64,000 bases of DNA from Setoptus koraiensis (GCA_048013815.1 CM106585.1:2852001-2916000); one strand, 5' to 3'; positions 46,743 through 60,290 are shown, counted from the stretch's first letter. Made by a program: numbers and translations. The notes: generated from the sequence alone by a model not told the origin.

Positions 46743-49700
46743 CTAATTTTCAATATTAGCCGGTGGAGAGGCCAGCAATGAGGCGTATTCATGTAAAACC
46801 TCATTGAGCGATCTTTGTACAAGGGCTGCTGGCGAATCACGTGTTGCACAATCGACTAGGTGAGGATACAGTGATATTACTTGATTCCAGACACTCTTAC
46901 CGACCACTTCGGGAGGAACCTTCTTCAGTGATGACATTAAAGTGGCCATTGCTTTCAAAACAAACGATATTTCCGACATCCTATGACGTGGTAGTGGGCA
47001 CTTCCCGGCTAGTCTCTCGTCGTGATTAAACTTGATTATCACATCACTGAAGCGTTGCAGGAGACAATTCACGGCCAGTTTATTTACAATTCCCACATTT
47101 TGCTCCGGCGGAAGTGATTCATTAATAAATAATTCTGGATTACCCTGAGGACCAAAATAAGAGAACTGTAGAAGTGTTTCAAAGCAACATCGAGCAAAAT
47201 CCTCGCGCAATCTGACGCTAGTGGATTCCAAGCAAACCGGCAATATGTTTATAGTCGGAGAATGTATTGATCCTCTATTGAGAAGTGTCACTATCTGAAG
47301 AACAAATTCCTTGGGTATTGAACTAGAATTTGGTAGTATTCTATCTCTAATAAATTCGACAATCTTAACATCAAGACCCTCATCCTGAGCTTTCAATTGC
47401 GCATTGTAAATGGTTGTCACATCACTTCCACAGGTGCTGTCTAAACTACTTGTGGTAGTCGCAGATAAACTAGGCGATGATTGGTTAGATGTAGACCTTT
47501 TAATAATTCTACCACTATTGCAGACTTGATTGGAGAAGGGAAATGCCAGTTGCTGCTGCTCACCATAATATGAACTCGAAAAACTGGCGCCAAATGGAAG
47601 TTGGTTGCGAGAATTGTTGTTCATCGAATTTCCAACAACGTTCAAATTAGTAGTTCCGGAGATAACATTCGGAAAAAGGAATAACTCTAGACAGAGTGCC
47701 AGGTCAGCCCAAAGGTTTACAAACAGTTCAGGATATTTTCTTGCTACGTTCAAACCTACTTGCAATATGTTTAACAAAGACAAAACTGCTAGTTTCCATG
47801 TAGAGTGATGCAATGGACATTGTTTAAGTTGAGGAGCATCCTGCATGATGACCACTATAGTATGTAAAACTTGAGATTGTATCACGACACGATTGTTTGC
47901 AAATTGTCTATAGATTACGACAAGGTTCTTCAGACACTTTTCTGCAAATGGAGTACTGTTTGGCATCATCATCTGGTCTGGTTGATGGATAACTGGTCGC
48001 TGGTCGATCGAGATAACAGGACATTCTGTTTTGATGAAAGAATAAGTAAAGAACTTTGCTAATTGTTCGAAATATACTGGCAAAATTTCATTCTCGATGC
48101 TTGCTTTCAAGATATCATCAGTTATTTGTTGATCCGACGATTGCAGTTGGTTAGTTGGATTACCGGTTGCAATATGCTGTTCAGTACTCTCATTTTCATT
48201 GTTTTGCATTTGTGGACTCTCAGAAATTGGTTTCATTGGAATATTTTGTCTCTGAATAGGTTGTATGGCTGGGTTAACTGGAATGGGAGGTGGTTCATCA
48301 GAATGCTTGGCTAGTAAATCTTTTTCGATTTCTCCCATAACCTCGAGAGCAGCGTTATGCAAAGGAGTAGTATGTATTACAGTAAGATTGTTATCCGATT
48401 GGCCACCAGCATTACAAGCCACAGATGATGTTGAAGATGGGTTATTGTGATTGATGTGATGTAAAGGCATAGTTTGGTAAGCAAATACGGATGATATGTC
48501 ATGATCTGTAATTGGAACTGATAAACAACGGTCCAACACTTGACATACTCGTTTAAATTCAGTAGCCTTGAATTCCGTCTTAATGTTGGGATATAGATAT
48601 AGAAATATTTTAACATAATTCAATAGGTATGTTTGTGAAGGGATTGTCAGCACATTCGCTTGCTCTGGAGACGGTATGACCAAAGGTCGCGAATCTCCAT
48701 TCGAGGTTCTAATCTTGTTGCACTGGGTTATCAGATCCTGCAAAAGCTGTGGTTCTGTCGACTCTGAGATTGATACGATGGGTTTTACTTTGTCGACGAA
48801 TCCGCTAACTTGCGTCACCTCTATGCCTATTGTACACCAAGTGTTCCAGGCTGATAACCATAAGGCTAAATCTTGTGATGCGTCCAATAGTTTATTGTTA
48901 TCTTGTTTTGGTTTTGCAGTGGCGTGAGATGCATTACAACTTGTTAATAACTCTTGAAAACTCTTCAATGCCGCCAATGAAACTTCTGAAACTTTGCTGA
49001 GAGAAGCAGTTTTAATGAATTCAAGCAGAACCTTCCAAGCGTTGGGAAACTTGTTGATTGCAAGAAGATTGTCCCTTTTAGTGGTAAATACTTTAGTAAC
49101 ACCGCTCAGTGCAAGAACTTGGGTCTCTGACCATTGTTTTTGGGCTGTGTTTCGTGTATGATGCAATAGAATTTCGCCTTGCAAATCGTCATAATTCTCT
49201 TTGTTGTCTAAACCAGAACCTGTAGATTGCTGAATCTTCACGTCGGAAGCTAGGCCGGAATTAGTACGGACTTGATTTAGTAACGGGAACAGTACTTGCC
49301 ATAAAACAGCTTGCCATGTTCTGGCTTCCAAGATGGACCCGTGAGTGGTGATTGTAGCAAACAAAGTTTGACAAGCACTTTTCCTTATCGCTGGTCGAGT
49401 ATCTATACATATTTCACTCAATTTTGAGAACGACGCCATCCATATAGCATCATAGTCTGTTAAATCTGATTGTTTCATATATTCATGAATAAAAGCTAGA
49501 TTGGGTGCGTCCTCTTCGAAGCCTTTCTTTATCTGATCAGTGTCTCGACGTGTCAAACCGCCGATTATCTTGTTTCTATTCTGATATAAATAATCAGCTA
49601 CATTCCATAACAACCCAATTGCAGTCAGCGACACATTCAGTTCTTGTGTTTGAGAAGCAAATTTGACAATTCCGGCAATGACCAAAATTATATACTTGCT

Positions 49701-51710
49701 ATCTATTGCGGATAGATAGTCACTCACAATCAACTGTAAACACTGGAACGCAATCCTGATAAGATTTTCATTTTGCATTTCATCAACAGTACCTATTATA
49801 TCTATGAGCTGAGGCCAGCCGCCTCCATATCCGAAGCTCATACTTTCACTGTTCGATAATAGAGAATCTCCGGAGGTACTCTGGATTATCTGCAAAACTG
49901 CATCTAATTGCTTTTGTCTTATATCTTGATGAGCTACGGTGGAAAGACTTTGTAAAGGCCGAAGTAGAACACGTTGATTCAATGGAAGTGGCTTGAGGTT
50001 TCTATGTTGTTGCTGTAGATGACAAGAAGCTTGTCTAATCAGATGTGTTAATGCGTCAGCGCCCCACTCTCGAATCCGCAAATGCGAATGATGAATTACC
50101 TCTAGAAAATGACTTGTCAATGGTTTCCATATTACATCTATTCTATGCAAGTTGACAAGGCCAATTTCTAATAATTTAACTATTATATAAGGAGATGGCT
50201 CTCGGTTTGGTGTGCTTGCTGATATAGGTGAAGCACTGAGAGAACTCGAATCTGTTGTTGGGGAAGAGTGTCCCTCTATTGTGTCACTTGATAGTTTACA
50301 CAACTCATCAACCAACTTTAATAGACAAGCATCATCTAGAAGAGGAGAGTTTTCAAACAGCTTTGAGATCATGGTTGTTAGAACTGGTACCTCTGATGTT
50401 GTAACTGATGATATAGTTGTACCCGCTGTTCCTGTATCGGCGCTACTAAGTCGTGCTAATTTGAGGGGTCCGCCCGTCACTTGTTTTAGACTTGTGTCAC
50501 TTTCGATGAGTTTAACAAAGATGGACATAAAAATTGCACTTCTGTTAATCAATTCACGATAAAACTTTTGTATTAACATGGAGAGTATACGCAATATACG
50601 CATCGACGTGGCGTTGATTGGCTGATCTGAGCTAATGTTGGCTATAACTGACTCTTCTACTTCATTGGGTGAGTGTGCTGACTTTTGATCTTTGTTAGTC
50701 GACAAATCATGTGCTTTGTTTAAGGGTAATGTTGATGTGTTCTCACTGTCCTCATAGCTGATATCTGGTGAAAATAGTTTCAGGATCATTGGACAAACTT
50801 TCTTCTTTATTAAATATTTGAATTCCTCGTGCCTCGCCAATGTGTCAGAATAAGATATAAAAACTATCTCAAGTAGCTCCAATCCGAATGTTCTAGTCAT
50901 CTCCGTCATGCCAACTAGCCAATATGGCTGTTCTGCTTTCACAAGCTGTATTAGATCTCGCATAAGTAGGAAGGCATCGGCTGCAGCTGGCTTGAGGGAT
51001 TTGGGTGCATACTGCTGAGGGAATTTGCTTCCATGTTCCAGCATGTTAGCGGTAACACACAGATGCAATTCATTAAGGTCTAATGGTTGTACAATAAATT
51101 TGTTTGCTAAAGATGCTTCGCCGCTAGTATTACTTCCAACCAAACCTTCTAATTGATCTTTATCTTCATTTTCGACCCTCTCAATGATGTTTGCCACTAG
51201 TTGTCTGATAGTGGCTGAGGCGACGTTCCTGTGGGGACTTTTAGTAAAATGCAATCTGAAACACAATACCAGAGACTTTGCTAGCGCAGCCCCCGTTACG
51301 ATACCATTGGTAGATACTAACAAAGTGACAGTTTGTAATACTTTAAGCTCTTCGGTGTTGTTTTCCATTAATGTCCATAGACAGTCGACAAAGTTACATG
51401 CTGCGGTTGGCGATAAAGCCTGGAAAGTAATTAATCGCTGGACTGCTCCCAGGCTTATTTGAACAATTTTCTGGTTTTGTTTGTTGAATTCACAGGCCAT
51501 AATAAATGGCTCAACTATCCTGACACTATCTTCGTACAAAGCCTGTCTAAGACTGAGACCGGATCTGTCAACCATGTTACTGACGGCTCTGACCTTGATA
51601 ATGCCAGCCTCCGCAGCCTCCTTAAGAGGGGGCAGTTTTCTTTTGGCCTCATTTGATATGGTTCTGAGGTCACTTTGTAAAGAGTCAAGAAGATTTGTGG
51701 TCAGAGCCAT
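46743..51710 (-). CDS. MON2: MON2 (Sec7-family-like endosome/Golgi trafficking scaffold), 1655 aa, intronless
   Basis: N-terminal DCB LLDSLQSDLRTISNEAKRKLPPLKEAAEAGIIKV, EMTRTFGLELLE, REWGADALTHLI, DTRPAIRKSACQTLF, QKQWSETQVL, REDFARCCFETLLQFS, CPLPRHRMSEISFVLKA. Confidence 0.95.
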   Translation of the reverse strand: MALTTNLLDSLQSDLRTISNEAKRKLPPLKEAAEAGIIKVRAVSNMVDRSGLSLRQALYEDSVRIVEPFIMACEFNKQNQKIVQISLGAVQRLITFQALSPTAACNFVDCLWTLMENNTEELKVLQTVTLLVSTNGIVTGAALAKSLVLCFRLHFTKSPHRNVASATIRQLVANIIERVENEDKDQLEGLVGSNTSGEASLANKFIVQPLDLNELHLCVTANMLEHGSKFPQQYAPKSLKPAAADAFLLMRDLIQLVKAEQPYWLVGMTEMTRTFGLELLEIVFISYSDTLARHEEFKYLIKKKVCPMILKLFSPDISYEDSENTSTLPLNKAHDLSTNKDQKSAHSPNEVEESVIANISSDQPINATSMRILRILSMLIQKFYRELINRSAIFMSIFVKLIESDTSLKQVTGGPLKLARLSSADTGTAGTTISSVTTSEVPVLTTMISKLFENSPLLDDACLLKLVDELCKLSSDTIEGHSSPTTDSSSLSASPISASTPNREPSPYIIVKLLEIGLVNLHRIDVIWKPLTSHFLEVIHHSHLRIREWGADALTHLIRQASCHLQQQHRNLKPLPLNQRVLLRPLQSLSTVAHQDIRQKQLDAVLQIIQSTSGDSLLSNSESMSFGYGGGWPQLIDIIGTVDEMQNENLIRIAFQCLQLIVSDYLSAIDSKYIILVIAGIVKFASQTQELNVSLTAIGLLWNVADYLYQNRNKIIGGLTRRDTDQIKKGFEEDAPNLAFIHEYMKQSDLTDYDAIWMASFSKLSEICIDTRPAIRKSACQTLFATITTHGSILEARTWQAVLWQVLFPLLNQVRTNSGLASDVKIQQSTGSGLDNKENYDDLQGEILLHHTRNTAQKQWSETQVLALSGVTKVFTTKRDNLLAINKFPNAWKVLLEFIKTASLSKVSEVSLAALKSFQELLTSCNASHATAKPKQDNNKLLDASQDLALWLSAWNTWCTIGIEVTQVSGFVDKVKPIVSISESTEPQLLQDLITQCNKIRTSNGDSRPLVIPSPEQANVLTIPSQTYLLNYVKIFLYLYPNIKTEFKATEFKRVCQVLDRCLSVPITDHDISSVFAYQTMPLHHINHNNPSSTSSVACNAGGQSDNNLTVIHTTPLHNAALEVMGEIEKDLLAKHSDEPPPIPVNPAIQPIQRQNIPMKPISESPQMQNNENESTEQHIATGNPTNQLQSSDQQITDDILKASIENEILPVYFEQLAKFFTYSFIKTECPVISIDQRPVIHQPDQMMMPNSTPFAEKCLKNLVVIYRQFANNRVVIQSQVLHTIVVIMQDAPQLKQCPLHHSTWKLAVLSLLNILQVGLNVARKYPELFVNLWADLALCLELFLFPNVISGTTNLNVVGNSMNNNSRNQLPFGASFSSSYYGEQQQLAFPFSNQVCNSGRIIKRSTSNQSSPSLSATTTSSLDSTCGSDVTTIYNAQLKAQDEGLDVKIVEFIRDRILPNSSSIPKEFVLQIVTLLNRGSIHSPTINILPVCLESTSVRLREDFARCCFETLLQFSYFGPQGNPELFINESLPPEQNVGIVNKLAVNCLLQRFSDVIIKFNHDERLAGKCPLPRHRMSEISFVLKAMATLMSSLKKVPPEVVGKSVWNQVISLYPHLVDCATRDSPAALVQRSLNEVLHEYASLLASPPANIEN

Positions 51711-52446
51711 GAGTTTTTGATCGGTTGTATAATTTCAGGTGTTTTCAGCTTCAAATAAGGGAGTAACAAACAGAGAGGGATGCCAAGAATGGGTGTACAA
51801 ATTAGCCGTTTGCTCACTAACTCATATATCCAGTTGCTGTACACTCCACATCATGATGACACTAATCTATGGTTGTGGAGAGAAACCGATAATAATAATG
51901 ATGTCGATTTGGTTGTAGCCGTCTTATGATGAGCGATTGAAATGGGAACAATTGTCAAAATTTTTAAAAGGTAGATCCTGCTTTCGTAAGTAGCTCCATG
52001 TTCCGTCAGAGAAGGAAAACAATTTATGATTTCTATCTAGTAGTAAATGCGACAATGTTTTCAATGGTAAAATGGTAGTGATAATGGTTGTAATATAATA
52101 GAAATAATAATAATAGCGATAATTTTATCAATTAATGGTAACCGACTCCTTTGTGAAATGTTTTTGTGTTCAAGCTGTCCAACTTGGCCATACATGCACA
52201 TACTGCACAAAGAGACAGTGGGGGAAAGAGCGAAGTAGAAATGACTTCAACATTGTGGTGACGAGCGAGTAAATAAAGCAAACCATCATGCCAGCTGATC
52301 TTTTGAAACACATTTTTTTGGTTCGGCATCTTGAAAGTTCTACACAACTTTTGCACACTCTCACTAACATGTAGTTTTCCAACCACCGATGACCTTCCGG
52401 GTGCTCCCTGCAACATATGTAATTATTATCTCCTATCGCCTAGAGA

Positions 52447-54309
52447 ATGTCTATCAAAATCTGTCCAGTCATGGCAACAAGATGTCCGAAAACTCAAAAA
52501 CGAAGACAGTTAATTTTAACTAACTTAACGCGGAATGTGACTAAGACGCATCTAGAGGAGATATTTGGCACTTTTGGGAAACTCAGAAACGTCAAATTGC
52601 CAGCCAACAAGTACAATCTATTTATTCATGACGGCTACGCCATAATAGAATACGAAAAGAGGAAATATTGCAGGTTAGCATTGAGGTTTATGGATGGAGG
52701 TCAAATAGATGGTCAAGTAATCCAAGTTGAACCATACTATGAGGATGAACATGACAGCGATGAGATGAAGTGCAAACAAAATAATCACAATACTGCCGAG
52801 CACTCAGTGCTCCTAGAGAATTTGGATATTGTGAATCTCAACCCAAGCCACTTGGATGAACGCCGCACGTCAGACACTGACAATTCACAAAGGGAAAAAG
52901 ATGCAAAGAATGAACGGTTATCAGCTCGTGATAAAAGAGCGATGGTAATCGATTACGATGATATCAGTTCGTGTGATAGTTACGATTCACTTGGCTCAGC
53001 TAAATCTTCCAAAAATAACTTGGAAAATAATTGTCAAATGAGACTAAATAGATTGGGCAACAAATCAACTGATATTCCAGCCTGCTCCAAGATAGAAACT
53101 GAAAATAATCCAATGCCAAAATCTACCAGAGAAGGGGATAGAGGGAAGCACCATGATGAGGAGGATAGAGAACCAAGGAGTACCTCAGAAATAGATAAGG
53201 AACGCCTTTATCAGATTGCTAAGGATAATTTGCGTAGGCTGATGTACTTTGGTGAGATACCGAATGGTACTGAATTGTACAGACTTGCCGAATTGCACAT
53301 TAAAAGGTGGGATAAAGAGGATAGAATGACCAGGCGGTCTCAGCGAACAGGCCGACGATACTCTGACTCCGAGGATGAACTTCTCGGAGATATTGCACAA
53401 AAAAAGACTCTGAAAAAATCTCAGCCTATCGAAATCAACGTCAGAGGCGGCCACAGGTCTGCAAGCCCTGAAGATCTACGATTTTTGTACCCTGTATCCA
53501 AAGGTTATAGACCTATAATAAATCCAGACATTCCTTGGGTAGAGGTGGATCCCCATTTTACAGGAAAGAAGAAGAAATCAAAACTTGATTTGGATGAGAA
53601 GACTGATGATAGCAAAGATGAGGTCTCCTTGTCGGAGAACGAGAAGATGTCGGGAGATCACGAGATGGTTCGGCCGGGCCTTGGTTTAGATGTTGGTGTC
53701 TTACATTCACAAAGATTAACCTCTCTAAAAAAGCTAGAGGAAGATCCAGGTAATGTGGTAGCGTTGCAGCAGCTCCAGTCCGTAACTAAACTTATAGAAG
53801 TGTATGAGAACACCAGAACACCAATGACAAAATTAGGCGGTAACGATGATGAACTTAGAAATTTGATTTTCCCAGATGGAGAGGGTTTGGGTCATCATCT
53901 ACTCAAAAAGATGGGATGGACACCAGGAACGGGTTTAGGTAGGCATCAACAGGGCATAATCGAGCCTCTTGCACCAAAAACTCAACTCGATACAAAAGGA
54001 CTTGTAACCGAAGATGAAAAAGTTAGAGACATTACAAGACAGCTTCTTCCAGGTAGCCCCAATGAAGTGACGTCATGGAGTAGAACACCTGTATCTATAT
54101 TGAATGAGCATTGCTGGAAGTCAAAGAGATTGATTCCTAAATATGAAATGGTTCACGAAGATGGTCCAGCTCACAAGAAGAACTTCCAGTACGCAGTTAT
54201 AATCAATGGAATTTCTTATCAACCAACAACCTCGTGCGGTAATAAGAAAGAAGCCAAACAATTAGCGGCCGCTGTGGCTGCTGAAGCCTTCGGTTTATTG
54301 ACGAATTGA
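52447..54309 (+). CDS. SON: SON-like splicing cofactor (G-patch + dsRBM) with an N-terminal RNPS1-type RRM, 620 aa, single ORF
   Basis: RRM LTRNVTKTHLEEIFGTFGK...GYAIIEYE...ALRFMDGGQIDGQ (RNPS1 signature); SON-type IDKERLYQIAKDN, YPVSKG, G-patch LLKKMGWTPGTGLGRHQQGIIEP followed by DTKGL, dsRBM PVSILNEHC...HEDGPAHKKNF...YQP...NKKEAK. Confidence 0.85.
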   Translation: MSIKICPVMATRCPKTQKRRQLILTNLTRNVTKTHLEEIFGTFGKLRNVKLPANKYNLFIHDGYAIIEYEKRKYCRLALRFMDGGQIDGQVIQVEPYYEDEHDSDEMKCKQNNHNTAEHSVLLENLDIVNLNPSHLDERRTSDTDNSQREKDAKNERLSARDKRAMVIDYDDISSCDSYDSLGSAKSSKNNLENNCQMRLNRLGNKSTDIPACSKIETENNPMPKSTREGDRGKHHDEEDREPRSTSEIDKERLYQIAKDNLRRLMYFGEIPNGTELYRLAELHIKRWDKEDRMTRRSQRTGRRYSDSEDELLGDIAQKKTLKKSQPIEINVRGGHRSASPEDLRFLYPVSKGYRPIINPDIPWVEVDPHFTGKKKKSKLDLDEKTDDSKDEVSLSENEKMSGDHEMVRPGLGLDVGVLHSQRLTSLKKLEEDPGNVVALQQLQSVTKLIEVYENTRTPMTKLGGNDDELRNLIFPDGEGLGHHLLKKMGWTPGTGLGRHQQGIIEPLAPKTQLDTKGLVTEDEKVRDITRQLLPGSPNEVTSWSRTPVSILNEHCWKSKRLIPKYEMVHEDGPAHKKNFQYAVIINGISYQPTTSCGNKKEAKQLAAAVAAEAFGLLTN

Positions 54310-59399: not shown

Positions 59400-59821
59400 T
59401 GACGGTGTTGCGTTATCCAGATACACAATCAGACACATCCACCTTGCATGACCTCAATGTCTACCAAGTATGTAAGGTTAGTAATAGAGTTTCGAAAATT
59501 TTCTTCTGGACCAATGAGAAAACCGTAAAAATAATTTAAAGCAACATAAGGCACAATCCTGGCATTATTTAACACTAGTTGATCTTGGACAAACTGGCAA
59601 TATCCTTGTGGTCGGAGAATGTATTGATACTTTGAACAGTCACAATCTACACACATTGATTGGGTATTGAACTGGAATCGGATAATTTTCTATCTCTAAT
59701 AGATTTAACAATCTCGACATAGCGACCCTTATCCTGATCCTTGCTTATTGTAAATGGTTGCTGCATCCATTCCACTTGTGCTGTCAGGACTACCTGTAGT
59801 AGTCTTGATATCCAAGGCGAT
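59400..59821 (-). pseudogene. Diverged, disabled copy of a 3' segment of MON2 (source about 47040-47480)
   Basis: Shared blocks include caaacyggcaatat, gtcggagaatgtattgat, ttgggtattgaact, ttctatctctaata, gaccctyatcctga, attgtaaatggttg and aggcgat; indels and an in-frame stop in the MON2 frame. The left boundary is approximate. Confidence 0.85.
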
Positions 59822-59824
59822 CAA

Positions 59825-60290
59825 AGCATTGTTGCAAGTCAAAGATTGATCCCTAAATATGAAATGGTTCACGAAGATGGTCCAGCTCACAAGAAGAACT
59901 TCCAGTACGCAGTTATAATCAATGGGATTTCTTATCAACCAACAACCTCGTGCGGTAATAAGAAAGAAGCCAAACAATTAGCGGCCACTGTGGCTGCTGA
60001 AGCCTTCGGTTTATTGACGAATAGACTCATGAGCGTTCAGAGGTCACTTATTATATTTCAATTTTCCTTCCATGGCAGTGCCTTCCCTGTCCAGAAAAGT
60101 CAAAGCGGAAGTGTACAGCGTACCAATCGAAAAACAACAAAATCTATCTGTGATTTATATACATGTAACGCTTTTGTTGAGTCCACACGCCATGAGGCGA
60201 TTGCTACATTATATAGGCATGGAATCGTGCTATCGAAAATAAACATTTGCTCATCTAAATTTAATAAAATTTAGACTAACAGTTATAATT
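59825..60290 (+). pseudogene. Copy of the SON dsRBM-coding end and 3' flank (source 54107-54372 and about 54415-54600)
   Basis: 59846-60088 versus 54130-54372: 6 mismatches in 243 nt. The stop TGA became AGA, and a 2-nt deletion lies at the 5' edge. The downstream flank is much more diverged. Confidence 0.9.

What the first reader, a model, noticed from the sequence alone, without database searches (positions are those of the whole stretch)
52447..54309. RNPS1-type RRM fused in frame to the SON G-patch/dsRBM module
Residues about 20-100 are an RNPS1 RRM (LTRNVT..H..EIF..FGK, MDGGQIDGQ) and residues about 250-620 carry SON's conserved C-terminal blocks, in one uninterrupted 1863-nt ORF. RNPS1 (EJC-associated ASAP/PSAP complexes) and SON (nuclear speckle scaffold) are normally separate genes that both promote splicing of weak or difficult introns; SON has no RRM. 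The long RS-rich regions of both are largely absent. I know of no described RNPS1-SON fusion. In an intron-depleted genome this may be a streamlined two-in-one splicing-fidelity factor, and it implies a functional link between the two proteins.
Basis: partly seen in the sequence, partly recalled or inferred. Interest (0 to 1): 0.75.

Follow-up and report, generated by a model that had tools for sequence, protein, structure and literature searches.

The report
Mite SON protein gained RNPS1 RRM
In this gall/rust-mite genome the only copy of the splicing factor SON carries, in place of the usual arginine/serine-rich front end, a domain copied from another splicing protein (RNPS1); the fusion is real, conserved in a related mite and not seen elsewhere, but RNPS1 itself still exists as a separate gene, so it is an added domain, not a two-in-one replacement.

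Summary
Window 52447-54309 (+) is one uninterrupted 620-aa ORF with an RRM (aa 21-96), a disordered acidic linker (97-248), SON-specific blocks (249-475), a G-patch (479-521) and a dsRBM (548-614). The RRM is RNPS1-type: RNPS1 is the best solved-structure match (1.6e-15, next RRM 2.9e-6), and 19 of 22 RNPS1-conserved positions are kept. The C-terminal part aligns collinearly with Tetranychus SON from its residue 144 (E 2e-62) and is the genome's only SON locus. A syntenic ortholog in another sample (69% identity) keeps the same single frame. dN/dS is 0.07 in the RRM and 0.35 in the linker, and a linker this long is open by chance with P about 3e-5. None of 93 SON-like representatives scanned has an RRM. 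A canonical RNPS1 gene, SAP18, Acinus and Pinin are all encoded separately, so this is a diverged RNPS1-type RRM paralogue added to SON, not a merger that replaces both genes. My inferred mechanism is that the RRM docks SON's G-patch/dsRBM module onto the Acinus/Pinin-SAP18 platform, standing in for the lost RS domain. No RNA data were available. This is a new variant of a known kind, of moderate interest.

The parts
52447..54309 (+). Whole coding sequence (620 aa plus stop) of the RRM-SON fusion gene, with no intron
   Evidence: ORF listing; syntenic 638-aa ortholog P0001/L007 at 69-70% identity over aa 15-620
52507..52734 (+). RNPS1-type RRM (aa 21-96), beta-alpha-beta-beta-alpha-beta fold
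   Evidence: Pfam RRM_1; best PDB match RNPS1 4a8x; 19 of 22 RNPS1-conserved positions kept; pLDDT about 88-97; dN/dS 0.07
52735..53190 (+). Acidic, Ser/Asn-rich disordered linker (aa 97-248), only one RS/SR dipeptide
   Evidence: pLDDT about 40 and no secondary structure; 42% aa identity to the ortholog, dN/dS 0.35; open frame by chance P = 2.9e-5; composition
53191..53871 (+). SON-specific conserved middle region (aa 249-475): the IDKERLYQIAKDNL box, helices 251-297, the YPVSKGYR box and helices 416-456
   Evidence: Collinear alignment with Tetranychus SON from its aa 144; SON-family consensus blocks DK..L..IA..N and FPVSSG; local phmmer hits to mite, scorpion and insect SON; dN/dS 0.10; model
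53881..54009 (+). G-patch (aa 479-521)
   Evidence: Pfam PF01585, 5e-15; 98% identical to the ortholog, dN/dS 0.01
54088..54288 (+). C-terminal dsRBM (aa 548-614), alpha-beta-beta-beta-alpha, with GPAH and KKEAK motifs
   Evidence: Pfam PF00035, 4e-14; ADAR1, HYL1 and TRBP dsRBD matches; pLDDT 95-97

Best explanation
Shown: this is the genome's single SON ortholog (SON middle blocks, G-patch, C-terminal dsRBM). Its N-terminal region, Lys/RS-rich in the spider-mite SON, is here an RNPS1-type RRM followed by a disordered acidic linker. The whole is one coding unit under purifying selection, shared with at least one other related mite, and absent from every other SON-like protein sampled. A canonical RNPS1 gene persists elsewhere, so the fused RRM is an extra, fast-evolved paralogue. 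Inferred: in RNPS1 this RRM mainly mediates protein-protein contacts. It binds the RSB motif of Acinus or Pinin and, with it, SAP18, and through them the exon-junction complex. The fused RRM keeps the RNPS1-specific alpha-1 motif (H-x-x-EIF) and the DGGQIDGQ box but has lost an RNP1 aromatic. It therefore most likely tethers SON's effector end to the Acinus/Pinin-SAP18 platform on spliced or splicing mRNPs. The effector end is a G-patch, presumably activating a DEAH helicase of the DHX15/Prp43 type, and a dsRBM that holds structured RNA. The RRM would thus replace the RS-domain route by which SON normally joins the splicing machinery, probably in competition with canonical RNPS1. My odds: gene identity and fusion about 0.9; the docking mechanism about 0.45.
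For: One ORF with three Pfam domains. RNPS1 is the top PDB match for the RRM by nine orders of magnitude. In the own genome the best non-self RRM match is the canonical RNPS1 (1.1e-15, next 2.6e-4). 19 of 22 positions conserved in 31 RNPS1 RRMs are kept. The SON part matches Tetranychus, Leptotrombidium and Halotydeus 'protein SON' and insect Son. No other SON locus exists in the genome apart from a 3' fragment. The ortholog P0001 sits in a syntenic locus beside Mon2. dN/dS is 0.07 (RRM), 0.35 (linker), 0.10 (middle), 0.01 (G-patch) and 0.09 (dsRBM), with dS about 1.2. The linker is open by chance at P = 2.9e-5 here and 4.8e-6 in the ortholog. No RRM in 93 SON-like representatives and none RNPS1-type in the top 150. 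SAP18, the Acinus RSB motif and Pinin are encoded in the genome. The RNPS1 RRM alone pulls down ASAP/PSAP and the EJC core in human cells (PMC9178013), and the RSB C-terminal helix binds the RNPS1 RRM (PMC5441173). SON's RS domain and G-patch matter for its splicing activity (PMC4394511).
Against: No transcript evidence: no RNA run holds the locus. An internal start that yields an RRM-less SON cannot be excluded. The fused RRM is only 41-47% identical to any RNPS1 and sits on a long branch. It differs from all RNPS1s in the beta2-beta3 loop (HPHLS to N-L/P-F-I-H), at K203 (to D), at Y207 (to I) and across much of alpha-2, so its partner may have changed. The 76-column tree cannot say where the RRM came from, and does not formally reject placing it outside RNPS1 (AU p = 0.385). 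The interaction prediction gave no verdict. SON's G-patch helicase partner is listed as unknown even in humans (PMC13111387). The fusion is documented in only two species.
Confidence: 0.6

Rival explanations
1. The fusion is real, but the RRM has been repurposed. After duplication it diverged so far that it no longer joins ASAP/PSAP, and it now acts as an RNA-binding or other protein-binding module that gives SON a new target specificity.
For: Long stem branch (0.68) and only 41-47% identity to RNPS1s, which are 58-83% identical to one another. K203 to D lies at a surface site whose mutation (K203D/Y205D) reduces splicing-factor recruitment by the human RRM. The beta2-beta3 loop and alpha-2 are changed. 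The complex test gave no verdict.
Against: The positions that distinguish RNPS1 from other RRMs (L-T-R-N-V-T, H-x-x-EIF, DGGQIDGQ) are kept and under strong purifying selection (dN/dS 0.07). The K203D/Y205D and R196E mutants still bound ASAP/PSAP and the EJC in human cells. Only one of the three canonical RNP aromatics remains (direct reading of the alignment), which argues against a gain of classical RNA binding.
Confidence: 0.3
2. Two neighbouring genes (an RNPS1-like gene and SON) that only appear fused, through read-through of a chance-open spacer or an assembly error.
For: No RNA data are available to show a single transcript. The linker is poorly conserved (42% aa identity).
Against: The 152-codon linker is open only in this frame (P = 2.9e-5), and the ortholog's 156-codon linker is likewise open (P = 4.8e-6), while the other frames hold 4-28 stops. 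Linker dN/dS of 0.35 with dS about 1.2 indicates coding constraint. An independent DNA contig spans 51000-54165 with no base differences. The SON part has no start context of its own at the homology boundary (aa 249).
Confidence: 0.04
3. The RRM-SON architecture is ancestral or widespread in arthropod SON and merely missing from incomplete gene models.
For: Many SON-like hits are fragments or partial models. The origin of the RRM is unresolved by the tree.
Against: Full-length RefSeq Tetranychus SON (570 aa, starting MEDISS...) has a Lys/RS-rich N-terminus and no RRM. 0 of 93 SON-like representatives of at least 250 aa, up to 1610 aa and from many taxa, has RRM_1. The genes called upstream of a relative's SON (L016) carry no RRM.
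Confidence: 0.04

Closest known systems
Protein SON (animal nuclear-speckle splicing cofactor; nearest named: Tetranychus urticae protein SON XP_015784061, Leptotrombidium deliense SON-like RWS22859, Halotydeus destructor SON KAI1278696, lepidopteran Son)
   Same: Collinear conserved middle blocks, G-patch and C-terminal dsRBM (33% identity over about 420 columns to Tetranychus, E 2e-62; 41-42% over the G-patch/dsRBM module to insects). It is the single locus of this kind in the genome.
   Different: It has an N-terminal RNPS1-type RRM and an acidic linker instead of a Lys/RS-rich N-terminus, with almost no RS/SR dipeptides (4, against 20-35). No other SON sampled has an RRM.
RNPS1 (peripheral EJC protein; subunit of ASAP and PSAP; RRM structure 4A8X)
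   Same: RRM with the RNPS1 signature (L-T-R-N-V-T-K-x-H-x-x-EIF, G-Y-A, M-D-G-G-Q-I-D-G-Q). 19 of 22 family-conserved positions are kept.
   Different: No Ser-rich N-domain and no RS/P C-domain. Only 41-47% identical to RNPS1 RRMs, with K203D and Y207I changes and an altered alpha-2. The genome's true RNPS1 ortholog is a separate gene (L002).
RRM-plus-G-patch splicing regulators (RBM5, RBM10, RBM17/SPF45)
   Same: They combine an RRM or UHM-type protein/RNA-recognition domain with a G-patch that activates DHX15 (PMC13111387). This is the same design logic: a targeting domain plus a helicase activator.
   Different: They are unrelated in sequence and domain order, have no dsRBM and no SON blocks, and their RRMs are not RNPS1-type. 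They did not appear among the best matches.

Membership tests
SON | G-patch followed by a C-terminal dsRBM | tested here: met
   PF01585 at aa 479-521 (5e-15) and PF00035 at aa 548-611 (4e-14); confident dsRBM fold
SON | SON-specific conserved blocks upstream of the G-patch (DK..L..IA..N box, FPVSSG box, helical block before the G-patch) | tested here: met
   Collinear alignment with Tetranychus SON aa 144-565, E 2e-62; consensus of 79 SON-like proteins; phmmer of aa 226-470 hits mite, scorpion and insect SON
SON | Nearest named relatives are SON, and it is the only such locus in the genome (orthology) | tested here: met
   Hits are named 'protein SON/Son'; the own-genome search finds only this gene and a 64-codon 3' fragment
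SON | RS domain or RS-rich region | tested here: not met
   4 RS/SR dipeptides in 620 aa, against 20 in Tetranychus SON and 29-35 in insect Son
SON | Nuclear-speckle localisation and promotion of splicing of weak introns | not testable with these tools
   Needs cell biology; no RNA or protein data for this mite
RNPS1 | RNPS1-type RRM (family signature rather than a generic RRM) | tested here: met
   4a8x_A at 1.6e-15, next RRM at 2.9e-6; own-genome RNPS1 at 1.1e-15, next at 2.6e-4; 19 of 22 conserved positions kept. Caveat: the tree does not formally exclude a position outside the clade (AU p = 0.385)
RNPS1 | N-terminal Ser-rich domain and C-terminal RS/P-rich domain | tested here: not met
   Only 20 residues precede the RRM, and what follows is an acidic linker and SON. 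The canonical gene L002 has both domains
RNPS1 | Orthology to RNPS1 | tested here: not met
   L002 is the ortholog: its RRM is 74-76% identical to trombidiform RNPS1 and lies in a 100/99-supported clade. The fused RRM is 41-47% identical and lies outside that clade
RNPS1 | RRM binds the Acinus/Pinin RSB motif and SAP18 (ASAP/PSAP assembly) | tested here: inconclusive
   The partners exist in the genome. The single complex job returned 'no answer' and is not counted for or against

The most novel reading that the evidence does not exclude
The fusion is a Rosetta-stone record of a general partnership. In these mites an alternative ASAP/PSAP-type complex forms in which the RRM-SON protein takes RNPS1's seat on Acinus/Pinin-SAP18. 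SON's G-patch (helicase activator) and dsRBM are thereby delivered to EJC-marked or spliceosome-bound RNA. In other animals the unfused SON would reach the same platform through its RS domain. That would give SON, whose helicase partner and recruitment route are still unknown, a concrete and testable docking site.
Probability: 0.3. Interest if true: 0.7.

Novelty: new variant of a known kind. Interest (0 to 1): 0.5.

Why it matters
SON is essential for splicing of weak introns and for nuclear-speckle structure. A 2026 review still lists the helicase partner of its G-patch as unknown (PMC13111387), and its recruitment is attributed to its RS domain and repeats. Here a lineage with very small, intron-poor genomes has dropped the RS region and put an RNPS1-type RRM in its place. 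In RNPS1 that domain's known role is to assemble ASAP/PSAP and connect to the exon-junction complex. Conserved domain fusions often mark proteins that work together, so this one predicts a SON-ASAP/PSAP/EJC link that can be tested both in mites and in human cells. It also gives a compact, RS-free SON (620 aa, against about 2400 in humans) that should be far easier to express and study. It does not show that RNPS1 and SON were merged to save a gene.

Tried and rejected
1. Complex prediction: own SAP18 (L008:1501-1911) + own Acinus RSB (L009:1471-1623, minus strand) + fused RRM. The tool's verdict was 'no answer' (score 0.85; 0.00 and 0.01 with the partner replaced; 0.72 with SAP18 replaced, less than the required 0.20 below). 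Only one job was allowed, so the RRM-RSB pair alone could not be run.

2. RNA evidence: no listed run is RNA. The four runs are contig sets that look like DNA, and laying them confirms the DNA but says nothing about transcripts.

3. RRM phylogeny (76 columns, 33 rows). The fused pair is solid (100/99), but its position is unresolved. None of three constrained trees is rejected: fused RRMs with the clade of own-type (presumably eriophyoid) canonical RNPS1s (AU p = 0.105), with all acariform RNPS1s (0.143), or with the two outgroup RRMs (0.385). The origin (recent duplication or older paralogue) therefore stays open. Rows left out: P0166 and P0120, near-duplicates of P0107/P0116.

4. Dating the fusion within Eriophyoidea. 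The canonical-RNPS1 relatives (P0167, P0171, P0173) and the other SON-like hits (P0011, P0013, P0018) come from samples other than P0001's, and P0021 was not on record. I could show neither that P0001's species has a separate RNPS1 nor that any eriophyoid lacks the fusion.

5. A trace of the ancestral SON N-terminus in the linker: BLASTP of the linker against Tetranychus SON aa 1-160 finds only the DK box at the boundary.

6. The Murachelli 2012 ASAP structure paper is not held. Interface statements come from the review PMC5441173 and from PMC9178013.

7. The canonical RNPS1 (L002) is spliced. I searched only its RRM-bearing exon, by reference (L002:1402-1902, minus strand), and did not join exons.

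Full report
OBSERVATION. Window 52447..54309 (+) is a single 620-aa ORF with an ATG start. Pfam finds three domains above their curated cut-offs: RRM_1 at aa 22-92 (5.6e-10), G-patch at aa 479-521 (5e-15) and dsrm at aa 548-611 (4e-14). Against all solved structures the RRM's best match is human RNPS1 (4a8x_A, 1.6e-15, aa 21-93). The next RRM family, PUF60, is at 2.9e-6.

IS IT ONE GENE? The four runs that do hold it are contig sets. One 9.9-kb contig (X1) covers 51000-54165 with no base differences, so the DNA is confirmed independently. The evidence for a single coding unit is evolutionary.
- A 638-aa protein from another sample (P0001, 69-70% identical over aa 15-620) has the same three domains. 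It lies in a syntenic locus, divergent from a Mon2 homolog exactly as in the window.
- Codon-by-codon comparison gives dN/dS of 0.07 (RRM), 0.35 (linker aa 97-250), 0.10 (SON middle), 0.01 (G-patch) and 0.09 (dsRBM), at dS of about 1.2.
- The poorly conserved linker is open in this frame only. From base composition the chance is 2.9e-5 here and 4.8e-6 in the ortholog, while the other five frames hold 4-28 stops.
A chance-open spacer between two genes is therefore very unlikely.

WHAT THE C-TERMINAL PART IS. Residues 249-618 align collinearly with Tetranychus urticae 'protein SON' residues 144-565 (E 2e-62). The nearest relatives in the exhaustive search are SON of Leptotrombidium, Tetranychus and Halotydeus, then a scorpion. 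Insect 'protein Son' matches the G-patch/dsRBM module at 41-42% identity. The blocks upstream of the G-patch (the IDKERLYQIAKDNL box and the YPVSKGYR box) correspond to the consensus of 79 SON-like proteins. The genome has no other SON locus, only a 64-codon fragment of this gene's 3' end about 5.5 kb downstream. So this gene is the organism's SON ortholog. An earlier scan note places the genome among gall and rust mites (Eriophyoidea). That fits the acariform nearest relatives and the 48.8-Mb, two-contig, intron-poor genome.

WHAT THE N-TERMINAL PART IS. The RRM carries the RNPS1 signature. Of the 22 alignment positions at least 85% conserved among 31 canonical RNPS1 RRMs, 19 are kept in both fusion proteins, including H-x-x-EIF in helix 1 and the DGGQIDGQ box. 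It is not the RNPS1 ortholog, however. The genome encodes a canonical RNPS1 elsewhere (L002, C1:22.44 Mb) with a poly-Ser N-terminal region, an intron and a Pro/Arg-rich tail. In the 76-column RRM alignment that RRM is 74-76% identical to Leptotrombidium and Dinothrombium RNPS1, and it sits in a 100/99-supported clade. The fused RRM is only 41-47% identical to any RNPS1, on a long stem branch. The 76-column tree cannot resolve its origin. Constraining it with the own-type (presumably eriophyoid) RNPS1 clade, with all acariform RNPS1s, or even with the two outgroup RRMs is not rejected (AU p = 0.105, 0.143, 0.385). The RNPS1 assignment therefore rests on the large similarity gaps and the signature motifs, not on the tree. 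Three changes stand out relative to human numbering, which I inferred from the mutants named in PMC9178013: K203 to D, Y207 to I (an RNP1 aromatic), and a rewritten beta2-beta3 loop.

ANATOMY. An AlphaFold2 model built on a 42-row alignment gives the following:
- a confident RRM at aa 21-96;
- a disordered stretch at aa 102-247;
- confident helical blocks at aa 251-297 and 416-456;
- the G-patch brace helix at aa 481-488;
- a confident alpha-beta-beta-beta-alpha dsRBM at aa 548-614.
The linker is acidic (35 D+E in 154 residues) and has one RS/SR dipeptide. The whole protein has 4, against 20 in Tetranychus SON and 29-35 in lepidopteran Son. Tetranychus SON has 143 Lys- and RS-rich residues before the homology boundary and no RRM. 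The RRM plus linker therefore stands where an RS-type N-terminus stands in the nearest full-length relative.

HOW WIDESPREAD. In the exhaustive search of 1.84 billion representatives, only P0001 aligns over the whole length. Local phmmer with the RRM finds no other protein that combines it with a G-patch or dsRBM. Pfam scans of 79 + 8 + 6 = 93 SON-like representatives of at least 250 aa find no RRM_1. Two very long ones (2951 and 4597 aa) were checked only by the local phmmer. No paper in the library mentions RNPS1 together with eriophyoids, and the Aculops genome paper does not mention RNPS1 or splicing factors. The fusion thus looks lineage-specific and undescribed. I could document it in only two species and could not date it within the group.

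MECHANISM (inferred). The RNPS1 RRM is used mainly for protein-protein contacts. The C-terminal helix of the Acinus/Pinin RSB motif binds it, and SAP18 joins the platform (PMC5441173). In human cells the isolated RRM pulls down ASAP/PSAP and the EJC core, and the surface mutants R196E and K203D/Y205D keep those interactions (PMC9178013). This genome encodes SAP18, an Acinus with a clear RSB motif, and Pinin. SON's RS domain and G-patch matter for its splicing activity (PMC4394511), and its helicase partner is still listed as unknown (PMC13111387). My best reading is that the fused RRM tethers SON's G-patch/dsRBM effector end to the Acinus/Pinin-SAP18 platform, replacing RS-domain recruitment and probably competing with canonical RNPS1. 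The main rival is that the diverged RRM has acquired a different partner or an RNA-binding role. The one complex-prediction job returned no verdict and is not used.

VERDICT. It is a new domain-architecture variant of SON. Interest is moderate. The fusion offers a Rosetta-stone hint of a link between SON and ASAP/PSAP/EJC, and a compact RS-free SON for experiments, but the mechanism is untested and transcripts are unseen.

PROCEDURE NOTES. Read laying was given 5001 letters. The spliced RNPS1 gene was searched by its RRM exon only, by reference, and exons were not joined.

Noticed in passing
window 59831-60085 (+), inside the 177-aa ORF 59741..60274: A fragment of about 250 bp, roughly 97% identical, duplicates the gene's last 64 codons plus about 60 nt of 3' flank. 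In the copy the stop codon TGA reads AGA. Upstream of the copy the similarity breaks down, so it is probably a dead fragment. The scan already logged it separately (s1-307657).
   Followed up: partly
window 54210, 54271, 54307, 54314: The four 'other letters' shown by runs X2 and X3 on one 218-nt contig (including T>A in the stop codon) are exactly the differences between the gene and the downstream fragment. That contig is the paralogous copy laid on the gene, not a stop-loss allele.
   Followed up: yes
window 46743-51710 (-) and 51711-52446: A Mon2 homolog (a single 1655-aa ORF) is transcribed divergently from the fusion gene across a 736-bp spacer. The same arrangement is kept in the relative's contig L007. 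All four runs lack 6 bases at 51744 relative to the window.
   Followed up: no
L002 (G000:C1:22441609-22444842), minus strand: The canonical RNPS1 keeps at least one GT..AG intron of about 150 nt after a short first exon, and its RRM exon ends at a likely splice donor, in an otherwise intron-poor genome. It also carries an uninterrupted run of about 25 serines.
   Followed up: partly
L010/L011 (G000:C1:12567443-12570984), minus strand: The Pinin (PF04696) match comes in two pieces, and the larger piece has two in-frame TAG codons. This is probably an intron or a frame change, and was not examined.
   Followed up: no
window 52463: G>A in runs X2 and X3 (organisms B and A) would change codon 6 from Cys to Tyr, in the poorly conserved N-terminal tail before the RRM.
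   Followed up: no
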